Below are positions 1,220-35,504 of a DNA stretch of 37,504 bases, in pieces. The first letter of the stretch is position 1; each line of letters opens with the position of its first letter. A program made the translations under genes and the position numbers. The stretch spans positions 1 through 37,504 of the forward strand of contig NW_021835894.1 in NCBI RefSeq assembly GCF_006345805.1, given 5' to 3'. The notes beneath the pieces were generated by a model. That model had not been told where the DNA came from, did not search any database, and saw only the letters and a list, made by a program, of their open reading frames with translations. This stretch comes from Octopus sinensis (taxonomy: Eukaryota).

Positions 1220-3700
1220 TCTCCCGCTCCCTCCTCCGCGCCACCATCCGCTCCACCCGCCCCCTCCTGACTCCCTCGACCATCAACTCCCCAGGCCCAC
1301 CTCCTCTCTCCGCCCTCTGCCCTCCACTCTCACCCAACCTATCCTCCGCTTCATTCTTAATCTCAACCACCAACTCTACAACTACCTCACACACACAAAA
1401 AACAAAACTCCACCTCCTCCTCACCCCTCACCCCCTTCCCCATCCTCCCCCACTGTTCCCCCTCCTTCGCACCTACGCCACCCTTCCCCGGACCCACACA
1501 CCCCCCACCGTGACCTTCCCGCCTACCAACCATCTTCACCCAACCACCCCTACCCTCCCCTTCACACCCCTGTGCACCCCCTCCGCCTGCCCTAGTCCTC
1601 CCCACCACCCCGCTTCCTCGCGCTGTTGTCACTATAACCCCCCAACCTCCCCCTCTCCGCCGCTGAGCGCTCCCTCCTCAGTAAGGGTCTCCGCTTCACG
1701 CCACTCACGCGCCACTGTGATGAGTTCGAGACTCGGGCGGACGTCAACCTGTTCCTGCCGCCTCAAACTTTGCGCATACTACCACGCGTCCCCGCAGCGT
1801 CACAACAATCAGGATTGCCTTTTGGAGCTGGGGCGTCGTCCATCCATCTGGACGCCGCCCCCAGGCCTTTCAGTAGCCTAGATTCGTTTGTACATGACTG
1901 CAACGCTTTGGTCCACCGTTTCAACTTTGAACCAAGACCCCGCCGAGCCAACCTCACTCGGGCCGAATCCATTGCCCTTCGCCACCTCCTCCGCCGACGT
2001 GATGACATTGTCATCAAACCGGCGGACAAAGGCGGGGCAGTGGTAGTGTGGCGCGCGAACCTATACAGGGAGGAAGCGCTCAACCAGCTTCAAAATCCCC
2101 TCTTCTATCGCCTCCTCCCCTCCGATCCCACCTCCTCCTACCAACAGCGAGTGTCCTCCACCATCCGCGACCTCATCTCCTCCTCCGCTCTCCCCCCCCC
2201 GCCACCAACCAACCTCATCGTCCGCACACCCCGCACCTCCAACATCTACTTCCTTCCCAAGATCCATAAACCCTCTAATCCTGACCGTCCCATAGTCTCT
2301 GCCTGTAATTGCCCCACTGAACTCATCTCCCTATACCTCGACCGCATCCTGTCCCCCTTAGTCGCAGCCCTCCCATCCCACATACACGACACCAACCACG
2401 CCCTCCGTCTCTTCAATTCCTTTTCCTTCCCTTCCAGCCCCTCACACCTCCTCTTCACTTTAGATGTAAAATCCCTGTACACAGTGATTCCCCACAATGA
2501 CGGTCTCCTAGCCCTCCAATACTTCCTCGACTGTCGTCCCGACCCCACCCCCAGCACCCCCACCCTTCTCCGTTTGGCTGAGCTCGTCCTCACCCTCAAT
2601 TGCTTCATGTTCGCCGGGGAAACGTACCAACAGGTGTCCGGGGTCGCGATGGGAACTAGGATGGGCCCCAATTTCGCCAATCTCTTTCCCGGCTACATTG
2701 AGGCCCAAGTGTTCTCCCAGTTCTCTGGGCCGACCCCCGAACTATACGGTCGCTATATCGACGACTGCGTAAGTGCCACCTCCCTTTCCCGTGAACTTCT
2801 CTGCCAATTCATCTCTTTCCTTTCCAACTTTCACCCCTCTCTTCAATTCACCTCCACCATCTCCAACACCTCTGTCAACTTCCTTGACATCTCTCTCCGC
2901 ATCGATCACCCCTCCAACTCTCTCTCACCACCACCGCGTTTGTGCAGCCGCGACCACGATTTCGAGACCCAATCTCAATACCTGGCCCGCATGTTCAGAC
3001 TCCGAGGTTACCCACCCATACTCCTCTCTGATGCCCTCACCCGCGCCCGTCGCATCGACCGCACTACCGCCCTTTCTCTTTCCCCCCCCCCCCCCCACCC
3101 CACGCACCCCCTTCTCCCCCCTCCTTTTCACCCCTCTACCCTACCCCTTCGTCGCAAGATACTACGTGCCTTCCGTCGCCTCCAGCTTGATCCCACCACC
3201 CGCCCCATTTTCCCTAACCCACCCCTGTCCTCCTTCAAACGAGCCCGCAATCTGCGTGACCTCCTGGTCCACAGCACCCTCTCTCCTTCCCCCTCAGCCC
3301 CACACGGATCATTCCCTTGCTCTAGATCCCGCTGCAACACTTGCCCCTTCATCACCAACACCACCGCTGTCACCGGCTCCAACCAGCATACTGTACGCAT
3401 TAGGCACTCTTTTACGTGCACCTCGTCTGGCCTTATTTACTGCATTAAATGCAACCTATGCGGGATGCTGTATGTTAGGACAGACGGGACGCCGGTTGTC
3501 CGACCGTTTCACTGAACATTTGAGGGACGTTCGCCTACACTCTTTTTCTCCCGTCGCACGCCACTTCCGCTCGGCCGGCCATTCCTAGATGACATCTCAG
3601 TGTTTGGTCTCGCCCCCCACAATGGTCGCCCACTTTCCAGGCTCCACTTGGAGCAACGCTACATCTTCACCCTACAACTACCACCCCACACGGACTTAAC
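1220..3700 (+). mobile_element. Penelope-like retroelement (PLE), 5'-truncated, RT + GIY-YIG endonuclease, several frameshifts
   Basis: N-terminal PLE-type segments are read across frameshifts (AVVT..PNLPLSAAERSLLSKGLRFTP at ~1620-1710; CRLKLCAYYH at ~1776-1805). RT motifs: DDIVIKPADKGGAVVVW, YFLPKIHKP, LFTLDVKSLYTVIPH, YQQVSGVAMGTRMGP, YIDD (2754-2765), VNFLDISL. The GIY-YIG region reads CNTCPF...CTSSGLIYCIKCNLCGMLYV/GQTGRRLSDRFTEH...VARHF...EQRYIFTLQ/TTTPHGLN, with frameshifts at ~3477, ~3587 and ~3675. It begins right after a (TA)n run. Confidence 0.95.
1770..3515 (+). CDS. Longest open frame of the PLE ORF: Penelope-type reverse transcriptase plus the first half of GIY-YIG (no true ATG; the frame is entered and left by frameshifts)
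   Basis: The 581-aa ORF in the track carries all core Penelope RT motifs, including YIDD. It starts at a TTG in mid-domain and leaves the endonuclease frame at an extra A (3477). It is probably not a functional CDS as assembled. Confidence 0.85.
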   Translation: MRILPRVPAASQQSGLPFGAGASSIHLDAAPRPFSSLDSFVHDCNALVHRFNFEPRPRRANLTRAESIALRHLLRRRDDIVIKPADKGGAVVVWRANLYREEALNQLQNPLFYRLLPSDPTSSYQQRVSSTIRDLISSSALPPPPPTNLIVRTPRTSNIYFLPKIHKPSNPDRPIVSACNCPTELISLYLDRILSPLVAALPSHIHDTNHALRLFNSFSFPSSPSHLLFTLDVKSLYTVIPHNDGLLALQYFLDCRPDPTPSTPTLLRLAELVLTLNCFMFAGETYQQVSGVAMGTRMGPNFANLFPGYIEAQVFSQFSGPTPELYGRYIDDCVSATSLSRELLCQFISFLSNFHPSLQFTSTISNTSVNFLDISLRIDHPSNSLSPPPRLCSRDHDFETQSQYLARMFRLRGYPPILLSDALTRARRIDRTTALSLSPPPPHPTHPLLPPPFHPSTLPLRRKILRAFRRLQLDPTTRPIFPNPPLSSFKRARNLRDLLVHSTLSPSPSAPHGSFPCSRSRCNTCPFITNTTAVTGSNQHTVRIRHSFTCTSSGLIYCIKCNLCGMLYVRTDGTPVVRPFH

Positions 3701-3759
3701 ACAGCCCCCTCCTCTTGAGATCCGCTTTTTTTTTCGTTTCCCGGATACACCACCCACAC

Positions 3760-6270
3760 ACACCCACCACCTACCTCCACACGCCTGTTCACACACACAC
3801 ATACGTAGACCCATCTACGTACATACATTCACACATTAATCACACACACTTATAGACATACATGCACACACTAACATACAAACCAACATGCACTACAAAC
3901 CACACATACATACATACACCACCACATACATACTACACACACACACACACACACACAGACATACATACACACATACATACACACATACATACGCACATAC
4001 ATACACACACACTCACACACACACACCGCACGTACATACTTCACACACACACACATGCACACATACATGTAGGCACACAATTACATACATACCCACACAT
4101 GCACACCCTTACACTGAATGCACACACACATACACCTTTTTGCATCCAGGCAGCCCCCCTCTTTTCTGCTTTCCGGTTTTGGCTGATGGATCCTCGGTTC
4201 CCGCGTAGCGGGGCGTTCGAGGGCCTTTGCGCTCGCGCGCCTTGGCGCGCGCTGGGGGCTTGGTCGGGCTTGGGCTTGGGCTTGGGGGCTTGGGCTTGCG
4301 TTGTATTGCTTGTGCGTTGTGTGCGTGAGCGCGCTTCGTGTGTGTGGGCTTGCTTCGGATGTGCGCGTGCGTATGTATGCATACATACCCACACACTCGC
4401 ATGCATCCCCACCCACATACATACACGCACACCTACTCACACACACACATACACACACACACACACATACCCGCACACACACACACATACATACGTACAC
4501 ACACATACCTACTTCAGACATACACACACACAGACATACACCCATACACTCACACTCACACGCATACACACACACACATACACACGCACACGTACACATA
4601 CACACACACACACACCTACATACATACATTACACTTGTACACACACACACTTACATTCATACACACACACACCTACACAGCCATACCTCACTCAGACACA
4701 CACACCTACCTACATACACACACAAACACACACCCATACATACATACATCTACACACACGCGCCTACACACATACATACACACATACATAAACACACACA
4801 CATACACATACACACACATACGCACACACACACATACATACATACAGCCATACACATACACACACACATACCTACATACTCCTATACGCACATACATACA
4901 CACAGACATACACACATACACACTCACACAAACATACACACACACATACTTACACACACACTCACCTGCACGCGCACACACATGCATGACAAACACCCAT
5001 ACACTCACACTCACATACGCACACACCAACATAAACACGCACACACACACCTACACTCCCACACACATACACACGCACCTACATACACACACGCATACAC
5101 TCGCACACACACGCATACACACATACTTTACACACGTACACACACACCTACATACACATGCATACACACACACACACAAACATGCACGGACACACCCAGA
5201 CATACATACATACACCATATACACACGCCACACACCTACATACACACACATATACACACGACCCCACACACCTACATACACACACATACATACACACGGA
5301 CACACCCATACATACGCACATGCATGCATGCATGCACACGCGCACACCTACACGCAACCACACACACACACGCACGTACACATACATACATACACACACA
5401 CATATACATACACCCATACACATACATGCATCCTACACACACATACATACACACTCACACATACATACACCACACAACACTCACTCACACACCTGTATGT
5501 ACGCGCACACACATGCATATACACACACTTCCACACACCCACACGTACATACATACACACTCATACACATACACACACACACACACGGACATACATCTAT
5601 GCACACACAATATACACACATACTCACATACATTCATCGGACACACACTGACCCCAGACATACACACAGACACACACACACATCCACACACATACAACTT
5701 TACGCGCATACTCGCAGGCGCGCGCACACACGCGCTTGCGCCGGTTCGCGCACGCATACGCGCTGCATGCACCTCGCTCTTGGACCCGACGAGACCTCCC
5801 GCTCGTTCCTGGGACCGTCGCTTGTCGTTGGGTTTTCCCACGCCCGTCTCCGCGGGACCACTCTTCCATCTTCCCCTCAGCTGGAGTCCTTTTTCCTTAA
5901 CCCCCCCTTTTTTGTTACACACACGCGCACACATATACACACATTGCTTAAATATATACATTACTCTTACACACATTCAATCTACTCGCCATTAATACTA
6001 CCACGACACTGGACACACACACACACTACTACTCAACACACGCTGGCACGCTACATACGCCCCACCCCTTCCCCTCCCTCCCTTCCTCCTTCCTTCTTTT
6101 TCTTACTACTGACCACTGTCTGCTATGCCTACTACTGTCTCGCCCTACCTCACACGCCTACACACAGACGCACACACTAACACTACATATATTTTTTTGT
6201 TTTTTTTATCTCGCCTCACACACACACATACACACACGCACACGCACACACTCACACATACACACACATC
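3760..6270. repeat. ~2.5 kb degenerate (CA)n/(CATA)n tract with non-repeat islands at ~4135-4300 and ~5770-5915
   Basis: Read directly; it is the source of the His/Thr-rich and Val/Cys-rich pseudo-ORFs. Confidence 0.95.
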
Positions 6271-6289: not shown

Positions 6290-6570
6290 TCTCCACTCTT
6301 TTGGCTTTAAAAACCTACTTTGCTCTTGTTATCGTAAACATCCGGCTTTCACCATGTGTAACTCGTAAACACCAGTCGTTTTTTTCTCTATCTCCTGTTG
6401 CCCGCTTTGGGATCTTTCTTTCCTCTCTCTTCCTTCTTTATGTTTCCGACGAAGAGCTCCGCTCGAAACGTCATATCTTCCTGCTTCCATTTCCTGAGCG
6501 CCTATTAATAATAATACTGTAATTGTTCCATTGTTGTTGTTTTTTTGTTTTCCCGTTTGGATTAAAATTA
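6290..6570 (+). mobile_element. PLE-type 3' tail/pLTR-like segment with a minimal hammerhead motif, ending in (TA)n
   Basis: Homologous to 19536-19790. Both share GTTTC(C/T)GACGAAGAG, TTCCTG(A/G)GCG, AATAATACT, and a terminal TTTGGATTAA followed by (TA)n. Confidence 0.6.
6446..6472 (+). ncRNA. Minimal type I hammerhead ribozyme motif, degenerate (U4->C)
   Basis: CCGACGA-A-GAG-CTCCG-CTC-GAAAC-GTC has a CUGANGA-like core, a 3-bp stem II, GAAA, a palindromic ACGT stem III and a GUC triplet. Stem I is poor. Confidence 0.6.
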
Positions 6571-6622
6571 TATATATATATATATATACATACATATATA
6601 TATACACACACATACATCTATA

Positions 6623-7016
6623 TACTCTCTCTTTTTACTCTTTTACTTGTTTCAGTCATTTGACTGCGGCCATGCTGGAGCATCGCCTTTAGTCGAGCAA
6701 ATCGACCCCAAGACTTATTCTTTGTAAGCCTAGTACTTATTCTATCGGTCTCTTTTGCCGAACCGCTAAGTTACGGGGACGTAAACACACCAGCATCGGT
6801 TGTCAAGCGATGTTGGGGAGACAAACACAAACACACAAACATACACACACACATACATATATACGACGGGATTCTTTCAGTTTCCGTCTACCAAGTCCAC
6901 TCACAAAACTTTGGTCGGCCTTAGGCTATAGCAGAAGACACTTGCCCAAGGAGCCATGCAGTGAGACTGAACCCGGAACCATGTGGTTCGTAAGCAAACT
7001 ACTTACCACACAGCCA
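6623..7016 (-). mobile_element. tRNA-derived SINE (Octopus OK-type), near full length
   Basis: Reverse complement of the copies at 19127, 22733 and 28314. It has an A-box-like TGGCTGTGTGG, a B-box-like GGTTCAGTCTC, an internal microsatellite and the tail ...ATGACTGAAACAAGTAAAAGAGTA. Confidence 0.9.
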
Positions 7017-14503: not shown

Positions 14504-16069
14504 AAGAAATCTTTCCCAACCGACCTCTTCGATCTTCTGTGATGTGATCTTTGCAGTGTGGGGTTGCGCATTGTCCTGATGAAACATCACTCGTTTTCGA
14601 CTCACTAAAGCGGCTCTTTTTTCCTTCAAAGCTTGGTTCAAACGCTCTAATTGCAGACAGTAGACTTCAGCATTGATTATGCATTAGGTGGTAACAATAT
14701 AAAGTGAATTACGCCTTTGCAATCGCACCAGATAGAGTAGAACCTTTTTCCCATGAAGTTCCCTTCTCGGTTGTGGTTGAGCCTTTTCCCTTTTACCAAG
14801 CCACTGTTTACGACGTTTACCATTTCGATAGAAAATCCATTTTTTGTCACCAGTCACAAGTCTATAGAAAAAGGGTGAAATGAGTTTGCGAGAATGGAGA
14901 GAAGAGCAAATGTCAACTCGGGATTTGCGGTTGCTTTCGGACAATACATGAGGCACCTATTTTCCAAGTTTAGGAATCTTTCCACGTTGTTGAAGATGAC
15001 GATGAACTGTTGTATGGTTTGAAGTAAGCTTTATTGCCAATTCTTCAACTGATAATGACGGATTTTCTTCAAGTAATGCCTCAAGGAGCTTATCATCAGA
15101 CTCAACTGGACCCTATTCGATCTTCATCTTCAATTTTGCAAACGATCACCTGCAAGTTCTTTCATTCAAGCACTTTCCCATAAACTGAGTGTATGTTTCG
15201 AGTCACTTCGGCTGCAGAGTTACCTTTATTATATTCATAAAGAATTATATGTGCCTTAAATGCTCCTTGGATACTTCCATGTTGAAGGGGTTTTAATCAA
15301 AGCAATTTTAGGGTGTCCACGAAGTTTGGGTGCATGGAATAAAATCATAACATAAACAAATATAAGAAATAATAATTTTCCTTTTTTACTTTTGTTTAAA
15401 TTAAAAAAAAAAAATATTTGCTTTTCAAAATTTATTTGTTATTTTTTCTACAGATGATCGAATGATGGATCTGTCTAAAGAAGAAAGAATCGAGTTAGTA
15501 GTATTAAGCCTTCCGAATTGGATTCAGCAGGATGGGGCTCCTACCCATTTTGCCACAACTGTTAGAGATTGGCTTAATGACGCTTTTCCTCTCTGGATTG
15601 GAAGAAGGGCTCATATGGAAAGGTCCCCTCGTTCACCAGACCTTTCTCCCCTTGATTTCTTTTTCTGGGGTATGTTGAAAGAGAAAGATTGCAATAAAGA
15701 TTACAGATTTAAAACACATGAGAGAACGCAGTGTGCTGAAATTGATGGCAATGTAGACTTATTTAATCAAGTTCACCTGCATTTTGCAAGGCGCATCAAG
15801 TTATGCATTGAAAAATGATGGAAATCACTTTGAAAATATTATTTATTAACATTATAATTAAATAAAATTGGTTTGTTTTAAAAGTATGTGTTAATCCCCA
15901 TGACTTTATGGACACTCTCTATTATATTGAAAACAAAATTGAATTAGTTTAAACGTACACAAATGCATAAAAATAACTTTTAATTGAATTAGACATTTGA
16001 AGATACTATTAAATTTCATTCAAATCTAAAAAAAAAGGTAAAATTGGACAGAACTGATTGGATGACTGC
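14500..16069 (-). mobile_element. mariner (DD34D-type) element relic; transposase pseudogene 14500-15280; 5' UTR interrupted by another transposon; 3' part lost at a (TG)n tract
   Basis: ATG at 15280 (MEVSKEHLRHI...), HTH remnants, *VPHVLSE (WVPHEL motif), VTGDKKWIFY, and MFHQDNAQPHTAKIT...GWE. The UTR continues past 15921 to a TIR-like end at ~16035-16069. Confidence 0.85.
15311..15919 (+). mobile_element. Internally deleted rosa/DD41D-like Tc1/mariner element nested in the mariner 5' UTR
   Basis: Degenerate TIRs (GGGTGTCCACGAAGT vs rc GAGAGTGTCCATAAAGT), with TA on both sides. The ORF MMDLSKEERIELVVLS is fused to WIQQDGAPTHF...WIGRR...SPRSPDLSPLDFFFWGMLKEK, with 40 residues between the last two catalytic Asp. 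Confidence 0.8.
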
Positions 16070-23119: not shown

Positions 23120-24574
23120 GCTGTGATGATACAAACTTTGTTGGTGATGCATGTATTAGGTTGCTTAATGTGGAGATGAAGACGTTGAAGCTGTGAATGG
23201 TAAGAACAGAGATTTGTATGTCTCACACGTTTGTTCGCGAACACTTACAAGGCGATTAAGGCTAACACAGTTTAGTGAAACCCCTTTGAATGGAGGGAGA
23301 TTTAAGAAATACCAAGATTGAGAAGGGTTGGAAAAGACTGCATGAAATATATTTAGGAATCTGGGATTGGAGATTTTGTTTTGGAGCTCGGAAATTTTAA
23401 TGAGTTGTTAATCACTAGGCATGAGATTTTTGCAGGTATTTTTGCTTCTACATACAAAAGAATGTAAATTTAAATTTGTTGAACAAAATGTCCGTCTTTT
23501 GTGAGGTACCGAAGTATTATTAAAGGCTTCTTATGGTCCAATATTTTCTACTTGATTGCGAAATTATTTGTGTTTGGATAAATTTGTTTCTGCTCATCTT
23601 ACTGCGTTCGTGAGAGAATGAGTGTGTTTGTTAAATCTGGATTTGAATCTGTTGACTGTAAGTTGGCTATAACAATGGAGTATGGAATTGTTGGTGAGAA
23701 AAGTATCACAATTTATATTTAAACATGTTTATCCATTATTTCTCTATGCAACATAATTTTATATTTACGCAGAATACGCACATGTTTACACACTTGCTGC
23801 TATGAAAATATCTAAGAGGAGAAGAAAATGGACGGCTGTGTTGATCTAATCGCTTAACACACTTATTGCAAAAATACGATTCCCACTTGTTCTCATGCTT
23901 GTTTTTTTCTTTTCTTCGTGGCTTCCATATATTCCATATAGTCAATATATAAGGTGAAAACTTATTATTATATTTACAAAATTTATATATTTATGATTTT
24001 ATTCCCTTCGTGTGTTTGCTTTCGGACTTGAGTTCGCCTTCTTTTGTATAAATACTAAACGGCGACATTCGTATGAATTGATTCTCCATAGTTTCGACAA
24101 CAATGCCCGAAGCAATAATAGATTCCAAAAGTTCAAGCTCTATTTATGCTCGTTTTCGCAAGACTCGTTGAAAGTATTCTCCCAACACACACTTGAAACC
24201 ATTATCAAAGGAACCCCTTCCCAATTACAATTTGCCCCAAGCAAATATTCAACGATAAACAATTTAATATCTCCACTAAATGTACCAAGTCAATCCCATC
24301 TCCTAACTCATGGCGTATGACCATCCTTCAAAAACACAAAGATAGGGCAAGAACTTAGAAAATTATTTGTAAATCTCACAACGAGAGATATTCAGTAACA
24401 GTAATTTGTATTAAAGATTGTTTGCCAGCATAACATGGCAGTCCTGGTTTAGGACGAATGTTGCTGTAATTTAGCCCCAGGAGACATCGTCTCCAGCTGG
24501 CTATACGACACGATCTGTGTCCTTATATTTTCCAACAAGGGAATCTAGCAACCCCGCTCAGCTCAAAACAATAT

Positions 24575-24617
24575 CTGTGTATCGCGATTTCCTGGTTATT
24601 TCCCTTCGTCAGCACAG
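24575..24617 (-). ncRNA. Hammerhead-like motif (left arm of the foldback)
   Basis: CTGTG-CTGACGA-A-GGG-AAATAA-CCA-G-GAAA-TCGCGAT-A-CACAG. It has a perfect 5-bp stem I, a palindromic ATCGCGAT stem III and an AUA triplet. Stem II has one mismatch and there is an extra A/G beside the core. Confidence 0.55.
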
Positions 24618-24635
24618 GATAATTGTTCGGATATG

Positions 24636-24673
24636 CTGAGGAAGGGAAAGAACCCGGAAATCGCGATACACAG
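24636..24673 (+). ncRNA. Hammerhead-like motif (right arm of the foldback)
   Basis: CTGAGGA-A-GGG-AAAGAA-CCC-G-GAAA-TCGCGAT-A-CACAG. Stem II is intact but the 5' strand of stem I has diverged (ATATG). Confidence 0.5.
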
Positions 24674-25155
24674 ATATTCTTTTGAGCTGGGTGGGGGTAC
24701 TAGATTCCCTTGTTCGAAGATATAAGGACACATATCGTGTCGTATAGCCAGCTGGAGACAATGTCTCCTGGGGCTAAATTACAGCAACATTCGTCCTAAA
24801 CCATGACAGCCATGTTATGTTGGCAAACAATCTTTACTCCAGAGCAAGAACTCTTGAAAAATGCATCTACGCCATTTCCTATTTTTTGTCTTCGGTCACA
24901 TGGAAGAAACCTTCATGGTTCAACTGAAAAGAAGGCAGCAGAAGCAACGCATAGTGCGAGTAGAGAGCAAGACCAGGCAAGCAAGATATCTTGGTCATCC
25001 ACAGCATCCTTGTCCAAACTTGCCACTAGATTGAAGATAGTCACGGACGAGGGTCAGGTTGACGGTGCGCAACTCTTCACTTTAAAACGCTTCCGCACAA
25101 ATCCCCCACTATCCTTCGGGATGGCTATATGGTTCTTTGTTGCCCTCAACCGACA

Positions 25156-26400: not shown

Positions 26401-28289
26401 TATTAACATTAAAGTATGCAATATAAAATATTGATAGATGTATAATTCGTTACGTATCGATGAAGGGTTCAAATTCTGTTCTGCTCCTTGGCAAGACTAC
26501 CAGTCATGAATCTAAAGACACTTCATCAATGTTCCAATAATTGAGTCATTTACTAAACATAGATTATTCTAGAGAAATGGATGACCGCGATACGCTTGCT
26601 GTGTTGTTTCCGAAACTCATTTATTGAACCTAGATTCTTTGGCGTGTTTTCTTTTGTACACACGTAAGAAACATTATGAATAGAAATATTTGTCGAGAAT
26701 GTTCCGCCCCCCAATTCTCTTTCGTTTCTAATCGATTTCCATCAGGGAGCTGCTTTTTATGATTTACTTATTAAAGTCGATTCATATTCAAAATCTGTCA
26801 ATTAAATAGTGCCGAATGTTTCAGGATTTCTTTGATATTTCTCCATTTGCTCCGCACTCTCCGTGACTTGATCTGTTTAATAACAGCTTCTGACGTTATT
26901 TTGGCAGTAACCCGCAATTCAGTGACGGTATCGATTAAATAACTTTGCCTAATGTGTGAAGAACTTAAATGGAATTGTTTTGTCTGTGAAAGCAGAAAGA
27001 AATATCTACGTGGTGAAAGATTTCATTTATATAATGTGTTATAGTAAATTCTTTGTTCGTTTGTTTCATCAATGAAATCAGACCAAAGTACAGCCTCGTA
27101 CATAACTGATAATACAAGAACAATACAACCAAGCAGTTCCATTGATATTTTGGTAGATTCATAGAATTTTACGAGTTCTCAATAACAATGTACCGGTAGG
27201 TTTACGTAATCTATTTCTGAAGAAGATATTTTAACCAACTGCAATATTTTTCTTTTGTTTTTTTTTGGTATTCAGTTTTCAAAATAAAATTATCGAATAT
27301 TTTATATTTGGATTTCATCTTTTTAAAAACATTAACCCGAATTTTGATACTGTTTCTATATTTGATCGTGTCTTTCCTTTGATGTTTAAATGTTTTCCGA
27401 TATTATAGCAAGAAAAATGTATTTCAATATGGACAAGTTTTGGCATTAACGAAAAGACTATTCGTGTCAATGCTGCATCGGTACCTATTTGTAAAGTAGC
27501 TTTTCATTGAATCGATTGATTTATAGTAACACATAGAGCAGAATAATTAAAATGTATGTTCTTCAAAATATTATAATTTATATTTTTTTTATGGATACAT
27601 TTAGAATAGTATGTAACAAATCGAAAAACATTACTGATGCTTCTAAAATAAATATACTTTGATAAAACAGGAAGATAAGTTTTGTATCTAATCATACAAG
27701 ATGGCCGTTAATAAAAAAAAATAACTAACGCTACAAAAGGTATTCAATAATTGAAAACCCGTACAGTCGGAACTATTCTATCTCGAATAACAGTAAGTTT
27801 ACCAATCTTACACTTCATTAGCTTTTTATTAATTTGAAATTCGAGGTTATCTCCCATACCTTTCTTGTCCAGAATAAATAATTAAGCGAATAAAGGCTTT
27901 TTTTCATGTTCTTTACTATCATCTCACACCGTGTATAAATTGAATTATAACAATTCCTTGCTCACTAAATTATATTAGCTCTGACTTCAATAAAAGTTTA
28001 CTTTAGTTCATTAAAAACACCAGAATTATTATCGATATGTAAACAAATAAAAAGGAAAATGGATGGACCGACATAGAAGCTCTGTTGTAAAAGATCTCAA
28101 ATCAAATGTTATTCTCGATGCAGAAATATAATGCATCGTGGCTTTTCCACCTCAACCAGATCTGTTTTCTTCGATCTATTTTAAGTCTACCAAAGCATTG
28201 AACAACAAACCTTCAAATTTCAAACATCAAAGCATCATACATCAAACAACAAACAATCAATCGTAAACAACGCGTGAATATATACACAT

Positions 28290-28684
28290 AGGGGCAAGAG
28301 TGGCTGTGTGGATAGGCGCAGGAGTGGTTGCGTGGTAAGTAGCTTGCTAACCAACCACATGGTTCCGGGTTCAGTCCCACTGTTTGGCACCGTGGACAAG
28401 TATCTTCTACTATAGCCTCGAGCTGACTAAAGCCTTGTGAGTGGATTTGCTAGACGGAAACTAAAAGAAGCCCATCGAGTATATGTGTGTGTGTGTGTGT
28501 TTTGTCCCCCAACATTGCTTGACAACCGATGCTCGTGTGTTTATGTCCCGTAACTTAGCGGTTCGGCAAAAAGAGACCGATAGAATAAGTACTAGGCTTA
28601 CAAAGAATAAGTTGATTTGTTCGACTAAAGGCGGTGCTCCAGCATGGCCTCAGTCAAATGACTGAAACGAATTAAAGAATAAAA
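28290..28684 (+). mobile_element. OK-type SINE (28314-28684) preceded by a 22-bp stub of another head (28290-28311)
   Basis: AGGGGCAAGAGTGGCTGTGTGG is followed by AGGCGCAGGAGTGGTTGCGTGGTAAG...CCAGCATGGCCTCAGTCAAATGACTGAAAC. Confidence 0.9.
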
Positions 28685-31490: not shown

Positions 31491-31690
31491 AGAGTTTACG
31501 AAAAAAACAAAAGGCGAAGACAGATGGTGTACAAAACAAACATATGTATTAGCCTAACGCTCAGGAATACAAAAAGTCTTTTACGTTTCGAGCCTACGCT
31601 CTTCTACAGAACGGGACACAGAAAAAAACAAGGAGAGAAACAAGGAGAGAAAAAATGTGTGTAGTGGCTAATGATCTATCATGGTGACTG
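31487..31690 (-). mobile_element. ~200-bp PLE-type tail between (TA)n tracts, carrying a variant minimal HHR
   Basis: It has the same layout as 6290-6570: pyrimidine-rich tract, HHR core, TTCCTGAGCG, T-rich tail, then (TA)n. Confidence 0.6.
31582..31609 (-). ncRNA. Minimal hammerhead-like motif, variant core (CUGUAGA)
   Basis: CTGTAGA-A-GAG-CGTAGG-CTC-GAAAC-GTA, with a palindromic ACGT stem III and a GUA triplet. A6 is replaced by U and stem I is only 2 bp in this copy. Confidence 0.5.
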
Positions 31691-35175: not shown

Positions 35176-35504
35176 TATATATATATATATATACATATAA
35201 AAGGAATGACCACTAGGTGGATACCTAATTTGCTAAAGGTAGAGCCCATATGGTCTGACCGCTAAGAAAAATTGTTCTCAAGAAAATTCGGCAAACGCCA
35301 GAACGTAAAACGATCAAGACAAATGAAACGATACACAATGTAGTGATTAGTGACATACCTAGATTTCATTGTTACCATTTACATTGCGTAGATGTCTGCA
35401 AATCCTCAGTGTGACTGTCATGGAAAATATAAATCGCAGAACTATATATATACACACATATATATAATGTATATTTATGTTATGGTTACACGCACACACA
35501 CATA

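What the first reader, a model, noticed from the sequence alone, without database searches (positions are those of the whole stretch)
24412..24836. Foldback whose centre holds two divergent, outward-facing hammerhead-like motifs with a non-canonical extra A/G pair
Seen: minus-strand CTGTG-CTGACGA-A-GGG-AAATAA-CCA-G-GAAA-TCGCGAT-A-CACAG (24575-24617) and plus-strand CTGAGGA-A-GGG-AAAGAA-CCC-G-GAAA-TCGCGAT-A-CACAG (24636-24673). One arm keeps stem I and the other keeps stem II, so their consensus is a complete type I fold with palindromic stem III and an AUA site, plus an extra A and G flanking stem II. Established: PLE terminal repeats carry HHRs and can be inverted. Inference: what looks like a TA-flanked MITE is a head-to-head dimer of an HHR-bearing retroelement tail. 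Read-through transcripts from either strand would carry a ribozyme and a ~200-bp dsRNA hairpin (a potential ADAR/Dicer substrate). The core variant may be undescribed.
Basis: partly seen in the sequence, partly recalled or inferred. Interest (0 to 1): 0.8.

Follow-up and report, generated by a model that had tools for sequence, protein, structure and literature searches.

The report
Inverted retrotransposon tails with decayed ribozymes
A 425-bp DNA hairpin in an animal genome is most likely a dead, back-to-back pair of short tail pieces from a Penelope-like retrotransposon, each starting with a worn-out hammerhead-ribozyme motif; this is a known by-product of how these elements insert and not a new ribozyme system.

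Summary
Positions 24412-24836 form a foldback with ~201-nt arms (90-92% identical) and a 19-nt spacer. The two hammerhead-like strings sit exactly where stated, at the centre, facing outward.

A PLE-style core like the plus copy's occurs in only 0.13% of shuffled windows. The layout matches genuine Penelope-like elements (PLEs) that I fetched. In L005, an inverted tail and the 5' repeat of an intact PLE form a 149-nt perfect foldback with the two hammerheads at its centre. L006 shows a similar junction.

I could retrieve no other copy of this family, so there is no consensus and no covariation test.

Three claims fail or shrink:
- The "extra A" is a published PLE hallmark, present in 19/19 reference motifs. 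Only the extra G is unusual.
- Covariance models of the hammerhead carried by this genome's own PLE clade do not recognise the motif (7.1 bits against 42-43).
- A read-through transcript cannot carry a ribozyme: the hairpin wins by 45 kcal/mol, and inverted copies cannot form the required dimer in cis.

Neither copy is intact. It is a new member of a known kind, of low to moderate interest.

The parts
24412..24836 (.). Whole foldback element (425 bp). Ends are TAAAGATTGTTTGCC... and ...GGCAAACAATCTTTA.
   Evidence: blastn self-match 24836..24412, 90.2%; hairpin -345.8 kcal/mol, z -31.6
24412..24614 (-). Left arm: a tail unit read on the minus strand (5' end at the centre, 3' end at 24412).
   Evidence: orientation taken from the hammerhead-like motif and by analogy with L005
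24615..24633 (.). 19-nt unique spacer (CAGGATAATTGTTCGGATA). It is probably the 5' continuation of the minus-strand unit and supplies 3 of the 5 nt of that copy's helix I 5' strand (24615-24617).
   Evidence: analogy with L005, where the 7-nt spacer is the 8-nt leader/helix I strand of the minus copy
24634..24836 (+). Right arm: a tail unit read on the plus strand, starting 2 nt upstream of its CUGA box.
24575..24617 (-). Hammerhead-like motif, minus copy: CUGUG / CUGACGA / A / GGG-AAAUAA-CCA / G / GAAA / UCGCGA / U-A / CACAG. Helix I has 5 bp, and the helix II closing pair is broken (G*A). The predicted cleavage site is between 24580 and 24579.
   Evidence: R2 model 7.1 bits, matching only helix I plus CUGACGAA
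24636..24673 (+). Hammerhead-like motif, plus copy: CUGAGGA / A / GGG-AAAGAA-CCC / G / GAAA / UCGCGA / U-A / CACAG. Helix II is an intact 3 bp, and helix I is only 2 bp because the unit is truncated at the junction. The predicted cleavage site is between 24668 and 24669.
   Evidence: chance 0.0013 per window; no score with R1 or R2
24344..24362 (.). Weak candidate target-site duplication, left copy (AGGGCAAGAACT-TAGAAAA). If real, 24363-24411 would be a 49-nt one-sided 'tail' extension.
   Evidence: local alignment score 23, shuffle P about 0.02; one-sided 30-40-bp tails are described in PMC8557442
24841..24860 (.). Weak candidate target-site duplication, right copy (AGAGCAAGAACTCTTGAAAA), starting 4 nt after the right arm.

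Best explanation
The foldback is a fossil of a single retrotransposition event by Penelope-like-element (PLE) machinery. Two short cDNA copies of a ~200-220-nt hammerhead-plus-tail unit were laid down head-to-head. Such a unit is the size and layout of a PLE pseudo-LTR, or of a PLE-dependent non-autonomous 'retrozyme-like' element. The 3' tails point outward and the 5' ends meet at a 19-nt junction.

Inferred mechanism: the PLE endonuclease/RT nicks and extends both target strands, so two reverse transcripts run toward each other. Each stops at or near the 5' edge of the hammerhead, which is either the 5' end of the template RNA or a template-switch hotspot, and the two are then joined.

By this reading the minus-strand unit kept its short leader, which gives helix I. 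The plus-strand unit is truncated 2 nt before CUGA, so helix I is lost. Since then the arms have diverged by about 10%, and the helix II closing pair of the minus copy has mutated.

The element is not a working ribozyme pair today. Any transcript through it folds into a ~200-bp hairpin that buries both cores, and inverted copies cannot build the dimeric helix III that this type of hammerhead requires. At most it is a generic source of long dsRNA.

Shown: the anatomy, the chance rates, the energetics, and the analogous structures in real PLEs. Inferred: the PLE origin of these particular arms and the two-strand priming mechanism.
For: 1. The plus copy has every sequence hallmark that PMC4209133 lists for metazoan PLE hammerheads: CUGANGA, one nucleotide between A9 and G10.1, G10.1-C11.1, GAAA, a palindromic loop 3, NUH, and a short helix I. 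Such a core occurs in 0.13% of shuffled windows.
2. The idealised motif's homodimer MFE is the classic double hammerhead, with an 8-bp intermolecular AUCGCGAU helix III.
3. Structural analogues exist in genuine PLEs. In L005, arms 2323-2471 / 2479-2627 (149 nt, 100% complementary, 7-nt spacer) are an inverted tail plus the 5' pLTR of an intact PLE (ORF 3001-5421). The hammerheads sit at the centre facing outward, the plus copy starts at U4 of CUGA, and the minus copy keeps its 8-nt leader. In L006, the plus copy starts 3 nt before CUGA next to an inverted copy. Inverted partners occur in 4 of about 11 PLE loci examined, and 2 of the 4 junctions lie at the hammerhead edge.
4. The literature agrees. 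An inverted 5'-truncated copy adjacent to the 5' end and a one-sided tail are described in PMC8557442. A PLE protein cleaves and extends both strands in PMC11167929. Animal retrozymes are reported as pLTR derivatives in bioRxiv 10.64898/2026.07.22.740005.
5. The genome is rich in PLEs. The window holds a PLE RT/GIY-YIG remnant at 1656-3689 and two PLE hammerhead-tail relics at 6435-6487 and 31566-31619.
6. There is no IR-DR direct-repeat signature of a long-TIR Tc1-like transposon in the arms, and the termini match nothing else in the window, including the mariner remnant.
7. There is a weak candidate 19-20-nt target duplication, offset by 49 nt on one side only.
Against: - No second copy of the family could be retrieved. 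Scans of metagenome, viral and prokaryote-genome collections with an arm 23-mer (metagenome and viral only) or the core pattern (all three) found nothing, and a protein-database probe with arm translations also found nothing.
- The arms share no significant sequence with any PLE tail examined or with the window's own PLE relics.
- Models of the local PLE clade's hammerhead do not recognise the motif. R1 reports no hit at E<=10. R2 gives the minus copy 7.1 bits and the plus copy nothing, against 42-43 bits for the true relics.
- The motif departs from all 19 reference PLE hammerheads: it has an extra G between helix II and GAAA, a 3-bp instead of 4-bp helix II, and a 6-nt instead of 2-nt palindromic insert.
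- Flush inverted-repeat ends with TA on both sides are what a Tc1/mariner-type MITE would show.
- Real PLE composite insertions such as L005 have a clear 12-bp target duplication (2313-2324 / 5650-5661). Here only a marginal one exists.
Confidence: 0.6

Rival explanations
1. It is a non-autonomous DNA transposon, a foldback or palindromic MITE of the Tc1/mariner type with a TA target duplication. Its arms are long terminal inverted repeats, and the hammerhead resemblance is a coincidence.
For: The inverted repeat runs flush to both ends, and both ends carry TA. The size (425 bp) and the near-complete self-complementarity are typical of hairpin MITEs. A mariner transposase remnant in the window shows that such transposons live in this genome. 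The motif fails both PLE hammerhead models, and neither copy is a complete hammerhead. There is no convincing long target duplication.
Against: A PLE-style core is expected in only 0.13% of 37.5-kb windows. For it also to sit within 2 nt of the inner arm boundary, facing outward, as in genuine PLE junctions (L005, L006), is a further coincidence that I estimate (no tool run) at a few percent. There is no IR-DR direct-repeat signature in the arms. The termini match neither the mariner remnant nor anything else in the window. TA flanks are also expected for PLEs that target TA-rich sites: the window's own PLE tails end in (TA)n, and TA-microsatellite targeting is described in PMC8557442.
Confidence: 0.25
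2. It is a living, undescribed hammerhead variant: a type I core with an A*G pair inserted between the catalytic core and helix II, and a 6-nt palindromic loop 3. It would cleave in trans-dimers or from single-arm transcripts that start at the centre.
For: The core boxes are intact in both copies, and two of the three differences between the copies fall at free positions (N7, loop 2). The dimer fold is thermodynamically reasonable. A mismatch at the base of helix II has a natural precedent, the U*U in axolotl HHR_Amex2 (PMC7229834). No extra 3' nucleotide of this kind was found in the papers consulted or in the 19 reference motifs, so the variant could be new.
Against: Each copy lacks one helix. 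Divergence within the motif (3/38) equals that of the arms, so there is no sign of constraint. The hairpin sequesters the core in any read-through RNA, at a cost of +45.5 kcal/mol. Only 19 nt lie between the arms, which leaves no room for a central divergent promoter. Even genuine PLE hammerheads cleave poorly in vitro, and cleavage is dispensable for insertion (PMC4209133, PMC11167929). There is no family evidence.
Confidence: 0.07
3. Whatever its origin, the locus now acts as a hairpin-RNA gene: a source of endo-siRNA or miRNA-like RNAs, or an ADAR substrate. This is compatible with either origin.
For: It forms a near-perfect ~200-bp hairpin, z = -31.6. The only Rfam matches are weak, below gathering score, and to miRNA-precursor hairpin models.
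Against: There is no evidence of transcription. The Rfam scores (28 and 26 bits) are far below gathering (142 and 57) and reflect generic hairpin shape. The arms have drifted by 10% with stem-breaking changes, and no compensatory changes are seen between the two arms in the small local hairpins.
Confidence: 0.08

Closest known systems
Penelope-like element pseudo-LTRs with minimal type I hammerheads (Cervera & de la Pena 2014, PMC4209133), in the complex tandem/inverted insertion structures described by Craig et al. 2021 (PMC8557442)
   Same: Shared features are the CUGANGA and GAAA boxes, one unpaired nucleotide after A9, G10.1-C11.1 (plus copy), a palindromic helix III/loop 3 implying dimer action, a short helix I, a hammerhead followed by a ~150-170-nt tail, and a head-to-head arrangement with the hammerheads next to the inversion junction (L005, L006).
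   Different: No PLE ORF is attached, and there is no sequence similarity to any PLE tail examined. Helix II has 3 bp, against 4 bp in the 19 reference motifs and 6-8 bp in the published min-HHRs. There is an extra G between helix II and GAAA, and the palindromic insert is 6 nt instead of 2 nt. Covariance models of the clade's hammerhead do not detect the motif.
Animal non-LTR retrozymes and amphibian satellite type I hammerheads (PMC7229834; bioRxiv 10.64898/2026.07.22.740005)
   Same: The unit size is about 170-400 nt. The type I hammerhead has a single A-U pair in helix III capped by a palindromic loop and is active only as a dimer. A mismatch at the base of helix II is tolerated in HHR_Amex2. 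These elements are thought to be pLTR-derived and mobilised by PLEs.
   Different: Retrozymes are direct tandem arrays that give circular RNAs. Here the two units are inverted, a geometry that cannot yield unit-length RNAs or a cis dimer, and no tandem copies are seen.
Palindromic/foldback MITEs of Tc1/mariner type (TA target duplication)
   Same: It is about 400 bp, almost entirely self-complementary, has TA at both ends, and has no coding capacity.
   Different: It contains a PLE-style hammerhead core exactly at the inner arm boundary. It lacks IR-DR repeats, and no matching transposase-bearing parent or second copy is available.

Membership tests
Hammerhead ribozyme (class level) | Conserved core boxes C3-U4-G5-A6-N7-G8-A9 and G12-A13-A14, with the A15.1-U16.1 pair and H17 | tested here: met
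   Both copies have CUGANGA, GAAA, the A..U pair and A17. However, an extra G lies between C11.1 and G12.
Hammerhead ribozyme (class level) | Three helices I, II and III around the core in one molecule, or in a dimer | tested here: inconclusive
   The plus copy has a helix II of 3 bp and a helix I of 2 bp. The minus copy has a helix I of 5 bp, but its helix II closing pair is G*A. Helix III exists only as an intermolecular 8-bp palindrome. Only an idealised chimera of the two copies has all three helices.
Hammerhead ribozyme (class level) | Match to curated covariance models (Rfam Hammerhead_1, _3, _II, HH9, HH10) | tested here: not met
   There is no hit at gathering score or at E<=10 on 24350-24900. 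This is weak evidence, because genuine PLE hammerheads in L001/L002 are also missed at E<=1, as are the window's own relics at gathering score.
Hammerhead ribozyme (class level) | Site-specific self-cleavage | not testable with these tools
   This needs in vitro transcription and cleavage assays.
Metazoan PLE-type hammerhead (PMC4209133 hallmarks) | One nucleotide between A9 and G10.1 | tested here: met
   An A is present in both copies, as in 19/19 reference motifs.
Metazoan PLE-type hammerhead (PMC4209133 hallmarks) | Conserved G10.1-C11.1 pair directly adjoining G12 | tested here: not met
   The plus copy has the G-C pair, but it is separated from G12 by an extra G. The minus copy has G*A. 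None of the 19 reference motifs has a nucleotide there, and G-C is invariant in 16/16 distinct sequences.
Metazoan PLE-type hammerhead (PMC4209133 hallmarks) | Palindromic 15.2-16.2 / loop 3 (dimer design) | tested here: met
   UCGCGA is flanked by A..U, giving the 8-nt palindrome AUCGCGAU. The homodimer MFE is a double hammerhead.
Metazoan PLE-type hammerhead (PMC4209133 hallmarks) | Family-level covariation in helices I and II | not testable with these tools
   No other copy of this family could be retrieved. For the reference clade, covariation is clear.
Metazoan PLE-type hammerhead (PMC4209133 hallmarks) | Location in the pseudo-LTR of a PLE (RT + GIY-YIG ORF) | tested here: inconclusive
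   No PLE coding sequence lies within 20 kb of the foldback. The geometry matches PLE inverted pLTR junctions, but no linkage was shown.
Hammerhead family of the window's own PLE clade (models R1/R2) | Significant score against a covariance model built from 6 (R1) or 19 (R2) hammerheads flanking homologous PLE ORFs | tested here: not met
   R1 gives no hit at E<=10 over the window. R2 gives the minus copy 7.1 bits (E 0.32 in 451 nt, with helix II and GAAA skipped) and the plus copy nothing. The true relics at 6435 and 31566 score 43 and 41.6 bits; both are among R2's training sequences, and their independent R1 scores are 28.5 and 14.1 bits.
Tc1/mariner-type MITE | TA target-site duplication flanking terminal inverted repeats | tested here: inconclusive
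   TA is present at both ends, but it is itself palindromic and part of the inverted repeat. No empty site or second copy is available to fix the boundaries.
Tc1/mariner-type MITE | Termini shared with a transposase-encoding parent; for ~200-bp TIRs, paired direct repeats (IR-DR) | tested here: not met
   The termini match nothing else in the window, including the mariner remnant. Outer-versus-inner direct repeats give P=0.10 and 0.90. The source genome itself could not be searched.

The most novel reading that the evidence does not exclude
The motif could represent an uncharacterised lineage of PLE or retrozyme hammerheads. In this lineage a purine-purine (A*G) step would be inserted between the catalytic core and helix II, and helix III would be a single A-U pair capped by a 6-nt palindrome. 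In addition, the recurrent placement of PLE inversion junctions at the 5' edge of the hammerhead (window, L005, L006) could mark the 5' end of the PLE template RNA, or a template-switch hotspot, during two-strand target-primed reverse transcription.
Probability: 0.12. Interest if true: 0.5.

Novelty: new member of a known kind. Interest (0 to 1): 0.27.

Why it matters
If the reading is right, the locus is one more example of the complex inverted insertions that PLEs leave behind. It also shows how such debris can pass for a TA-flanked MITE in repeat annotation. That matters for transposon classification in PLE-rich invertebrate genomes, and for anyone who mines genomes for ribozymes with descriptors.

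The practical lessons go beyond this locus. Rfam's hammerhead models miss genuine PLE hammerheads, while a small clade-specific model found two real relics in this window. A hammerhead-like core inside a long inverted repeat should not be assumed to fold.

The only part with discovery potential is modest: whether the extra G defines a real core variant, and whether PLE inversion junctions preferentially fall at the hammerhead's 5' edge.

Tried and rejected
1. Rfam at gathering score and at E<=10 gave no hammerhead, only generic miRNA-hairpin hits. I rejected this as evidence either way, because Rfam also misses true PLE hammerheads.
2. Searches for other copies all returned nothing: an arm 23-mer in metagenome and viral contigs; the core pattern CTGANGAAGGGN{4,8}CCNGGAAATCGCGAT in metagenome, prokaryote-genome and viral contigs; and concatenated conceptual translations of the arms against the 5.8-billion-protein database.
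3. Host identification failed. The best PLE ORF hit is 53% identical, from unnamed marine assemblies, and the best mariner remnant hit is 64% identical, from a mantis shrimp. A resemblance of 6620-6760 to an octopus SINE comes from memory only.
4. Pfam on the PLE and mariner ORFs returned nothing. Homologues nevertheless carry RVT_1, GIY-YIG, DUF8422 and HTH_animal.
5. There is no sequence similarity between the arms and PLE tails from L001-L005 or the window's own PLE-tail relics.
6. I considered a monomeric hammerhead fold. The motif alone prefers other pairings, and helix III cannot close as a monomer.
7. I considered an IR-DR Tc1-like MITE and found no direct repeats.
8. A literature text search for the core strings found only unrelated primers. 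Lunse et al. 2017 (PMC5785218) is not held, so its catalogue of PLE hammerhead variants could not be checked for the extra G.
9. P0057 (Littorina) was not on record for a locus lookup.
Full report
**1. What is there**

The window is eukaryotic in character: 38% G+C with dozens of microsatellites. Positions 24412-24836 form a 425-bp foldback. The ungapped inverted repeat is reported as 24407-24614 / 24634-24841, 208 nt and 92% complementary, with 19 nt between the arms. A gapped alignment and a blastn self-match give 24412-24836 at 90.2% identity, which are exactly the finding's coordinates. As RNA it folds into a nearly perfect hairpin (-345.8 kcal/mol, z = -31.6).

The two motif strings are present with no mismatch, at 24612..24575 (minus, preceded by CTGTG at 24617..24613) and at 24636-24673 (plus). 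Because they lie in the two arms of one inverted repeat, they count as one observation, not two. There is no other copy of the element or of its termini in the window.

**2. Is the hammerhead resemblance more than chance?**

Parsed as a type I hammerhead, the plus copy reads CUGAGGA / A / GGG-AAAGAA-CCC / G / GAAA / UCGCGA / U-A / CACAG.

Neither copy passes a full descriptor. The plus copy has only 2 bp of helix I. The minus copy has 5 bp of helix I, but a G*A mismatch at the helix II closing pair.

- A loose core descriptor is unimpressive. It occurs in 16.5% of dinucleotide-shuffled windows, and the window has an unrelated hit at 35353-35412(-).
[quoted passage not shown] The plus copy has all three. 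A descriptor that requires them matches only 2 of 1500 shuffled windows, or 0.13%. That descriptor also allowed an optional 3' bulge, added post hoc to admit the extra G; without it the window has no hit (0.07% of shuffles).
- The homodimer of the idealised motif folds into the classic double hammerhead, with an 8-bp intermolecular helix III, AUCGCGAU.

So the resemblance is probably not noise. It is, however, a resemblance in design, not evidence of conservation.

**3. What the literature changes**

Only the extra G between helix II and GAAA is unusual. The core insertions listed by Perreault et al. (PMC3088659) are elsewhere (2a/2b, 6a, 13a).

If the A and G are instead read as a mismatched first pair of a 4-position helix II, there is a near precedent. 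The abundant axolotl HHR_Amex2 family has a U*U mismatch at the base of helix II, and amphibian hammerheads have a 1-bp helix III capped by a palindromic loop (PMC7229834). The Lunse et al. catalogue of PLE variants is not held.

**4. Context in the window**

The ORFs at 1770-3515 and 2773-3588 are a frameshifted PLE remnant. tblastn maps 1656-3689 onto residues ~85-800 of homologues that carry RVT_1, DUF8422, HTH_animal and GIY-YIG domains. The best identity in the protein search is 53%, so the source species is not in the protein index. A mariner remnant at 15462-15818 likewise found no close relative.

**5. Real PLE hammerheads as a yardstick**

I fetched genomic loci of the PLE homologues (L001-L005, L008-L012). 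Searching for their hammerhead sequence also turned up two eukaryotic contaminant contigs in a 'bacterial' MAG (L006, L007).

All the loci carry a hammerhead just downstream of the ORF, of the form C[U/C]GACGA-A-G-NNN-loop-NNN-C-GAAA-CG-UC, followed by a tail of about 150 nt. Rfam misses the ones tested (L001, L002) at E<=1, so its silence on the foldback motif is uninformative.

The family is well supported by covariation. 96.4% of cells are paired, 4 of 7 pairs show compensatory changes, 0 of 500 shuffles reach the observed values, and helix II occurs as GGGC/GCUC, GGAC/GUCC, GACC/GGUC and GAGC/GCUC. One caveat is that the alignment was fitted to the model.

All 19 motifs have the extra A. 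None has a nucleotide between C11.1 and G12.

**6. Membership test**

A covariance model built from six of these motifs (R1) was searched over the whole window with filters off. It found two genuine relics that everything else had missed: 6435-6487(+) at 28.5 bits, E = 6.5e-6, and 31566-31619(-) at 14.1 bits. It did not report the foldback motif at E<=10.

A broader model (R2, 19 sequences) scores those two relics at 43 and 41.6 bits (they are among its 19 training sequences). It gives the foldback's minus copy 7.1 bits, and only by skipping helix II and GAAA. The plus copy scores nothing.

The arms also share no significant sequence with these relics or with any fetched PLE tail. The foldback motif is therefore not a member of the hammerhead family of the PLE clade that can be identified in this genome. 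If it is PLE-derived, it comes from another lineage.

**7.

In L005, an intact PLE (ORF 3001-5421) is preceded by arms 2323-2471 / 2479-2627. These are 149 nt long, 100% complementary, and 7 nt apart.

Base by base, the left arm is an inverted tail whose hammerhead reads leftward and keeps its 8-nt leader (cattcgct, which contains the helix I strand). The right arm is the element's own 5' pseudo-LTR, and it begins at U4 of CUGA.

That is the window's anatomy in every respect:
- two divergent hammerheads at the centre;
- a short spacer that belongs to one unit;
- one copy with helix I and one without.

The whole L005 composite is bracketed by a 12-bp target duplication, ATTATGATAGTG (2313-2324 / 5650-5661).

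In L006, a plus-strand copy begins 3 nt before CUGA next to an inverted copy, with stuttered helix II fragments at the junction. In L001 and L010, the inverted partner is truncated inside the ORF instead. So 4 of about 11 loci have inverted partners, and 2 of the 4 junctions lie at the hammerhead edge.

The literature fits this picture. [quoted passage not shown] Frangieh et al. show that a PLE protein cleaves and extends both target strands and initiates reverse transcription internally (PMC11167929). Together these offer a mechanism for two cDNAs that meet head-to-head.

**8. The MITE rival**

In its favour are the flush inverted-repeat ends carrying TA, the size of the element, and the lack of a clear long target duplication.

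Against it:
- the improbability of a PLE-style core sitting within 2 nt of the inner arm boundary and facing outward;
- the absence of IR-DR direct repeats, which a ~200-bp Tc1-like TIR would carry;
- the absence of any match of the termini to the mariner remnant.

TA flanks do not discriminate between the two readings, because the window's own PLE tails end in (TA)n.

A marginal 19-20-nt flank match, 24344-24362 against 24841-24860 (shuffle P about 0.02), could be a target duplication with a one-sided 49-nt tail. I treat this only as a lead.

**9. Function**

Folding shows that only the hairpin would form. Holding the plus-strand core out of the hairpin costs +45.5 kcal/mol, and the ensemble probability of its helix II is about 1e-12.

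The two copies are on opposite strands, so no single RNA contains two sense hammerheads. That excludes the cis dimer that a palindromic-helix-III hammerhead needs. Only 19 nt separate the arms, which leaves no room for a central divergent promoter.

The motif has diverged between the arms as fast as the rest of the sequence (3 of 38 positions against about 10%), and one of those changes breaks G10.1-C11.1. Single arms are only modestly structured (z = -2.1 to -2.5), like a real PLE tail (z = -2.3).

The element is best seen as inert debris that could, if transcribed, yield long dsRNA, as any long inverted repeat would.

**10. Verdict**

The MITE-plus-coincidence alternative keeps about 0.25.

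The 'undescribed core variant' reduces to a single extra G in a decayed, single-locus motif. This is a new member of a known kind, and its interest is low to moderate.

Noticed in passing
window 6435-6487 (+) and 31566-31619 (-): These are two genuine PLE-clade hammerhead relics (CCGACGA-A-GAGC-UCC-GCUC-GAAA-CG-UC and CUGUAGA-A-GAGC-GUAG-GCUC-GAAA-CG-UA). Each has a pyrimidine-rich leader, a shared TTCCTGAGCG, and a ~130-nt tail ending in (TA)n. Rfam and simple regexes missed them; the clade-specific models found them (R1 28.5 and 14.1 bits; R2 43 and 41.6 bits).
   Followed up: yes
window 1656-3689 (+), with 3791-6270: This is a frameshifted Penelope-like element remnant (RT + GIY-YIG; best homologue 53% identical). 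The hammerhead relic at 6435 is probably its 3' pseudo-LTR, separated from the ORF by a ~2.5-kb CA-rich microsatellite expansion.
   Followed up: partly
window 1656-3689 (+): The coding strand of the PLE remnant is 41% C, against 25-28% in six relatives and 17% in the rest of the window. Mismatches against relatives are enriched for T>C and A>C. The cause is unknown; it could be lineage composition or hypermutation.
   Followed up: partly
L003:3824, L004:5381, L004:8110-8170(-), L006:7304-7354(-), L009:5237-5287, L002:109-159, window 6435-6487: The normally essential U4 of the hammerhead core is C (CCGA; CCAA in L002) in 7 of 19 PLE hammerheads, while the rest of the motif is almost invariant. 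This suggests the sequence is conserved for something other than, or in addition to, self-cleavage.
   Followed up: partly
L005:2313-5661; L006:7247-7755; L001:1986-3612; L010:3246-6227: Four of about 11 PLE loci have an inverted partner copy. In two of them the junction lies within 0-8 nt of the 5' edge of the hammerhead, with an A-rich filler (L005 ~5521-5547) or stuttered helix II fragments (L006 upstream of 7596) at unit boundaries. This may be a template-switch hotspot or the 5' end of the template RNA.
   Followed up: partly
L006, L007 (GTDB record CBDDTI010000728.1 / CBDDTI010000622.1, 'MAG: bacterium'): Contigs of a metagenome-assembled 'bacterial' genome carry animal PLE hammerhead-tail units identical in core to those of L001/L005. 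This is eukaryotic contamination of the MAG.
   Followed up: no
window 15462-15818 (+): This is a mariner-type transposase remnant. The best relative is 64% identical, an uncharacterised protein of the mantis shrimp Oratosquilla oratoria. No terminal inverted repeats were recognisable.
   Followed up: partly
window 6620-6760 and 28288-28335: The sequence resembles, from memory only, a tRNA-derived SINE of octopus genomes. The host species could not be identified with the tools.
   Followed up: no
window 35353-35412 (-): This is a chance-level hit to the loose hammerhead descriptor (CUGAGGA ... GAAA, with a 27-nt loop 2 and no palindromic loop 3). It shows how easily relaxed descriptors fire.
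   Followed up: yes
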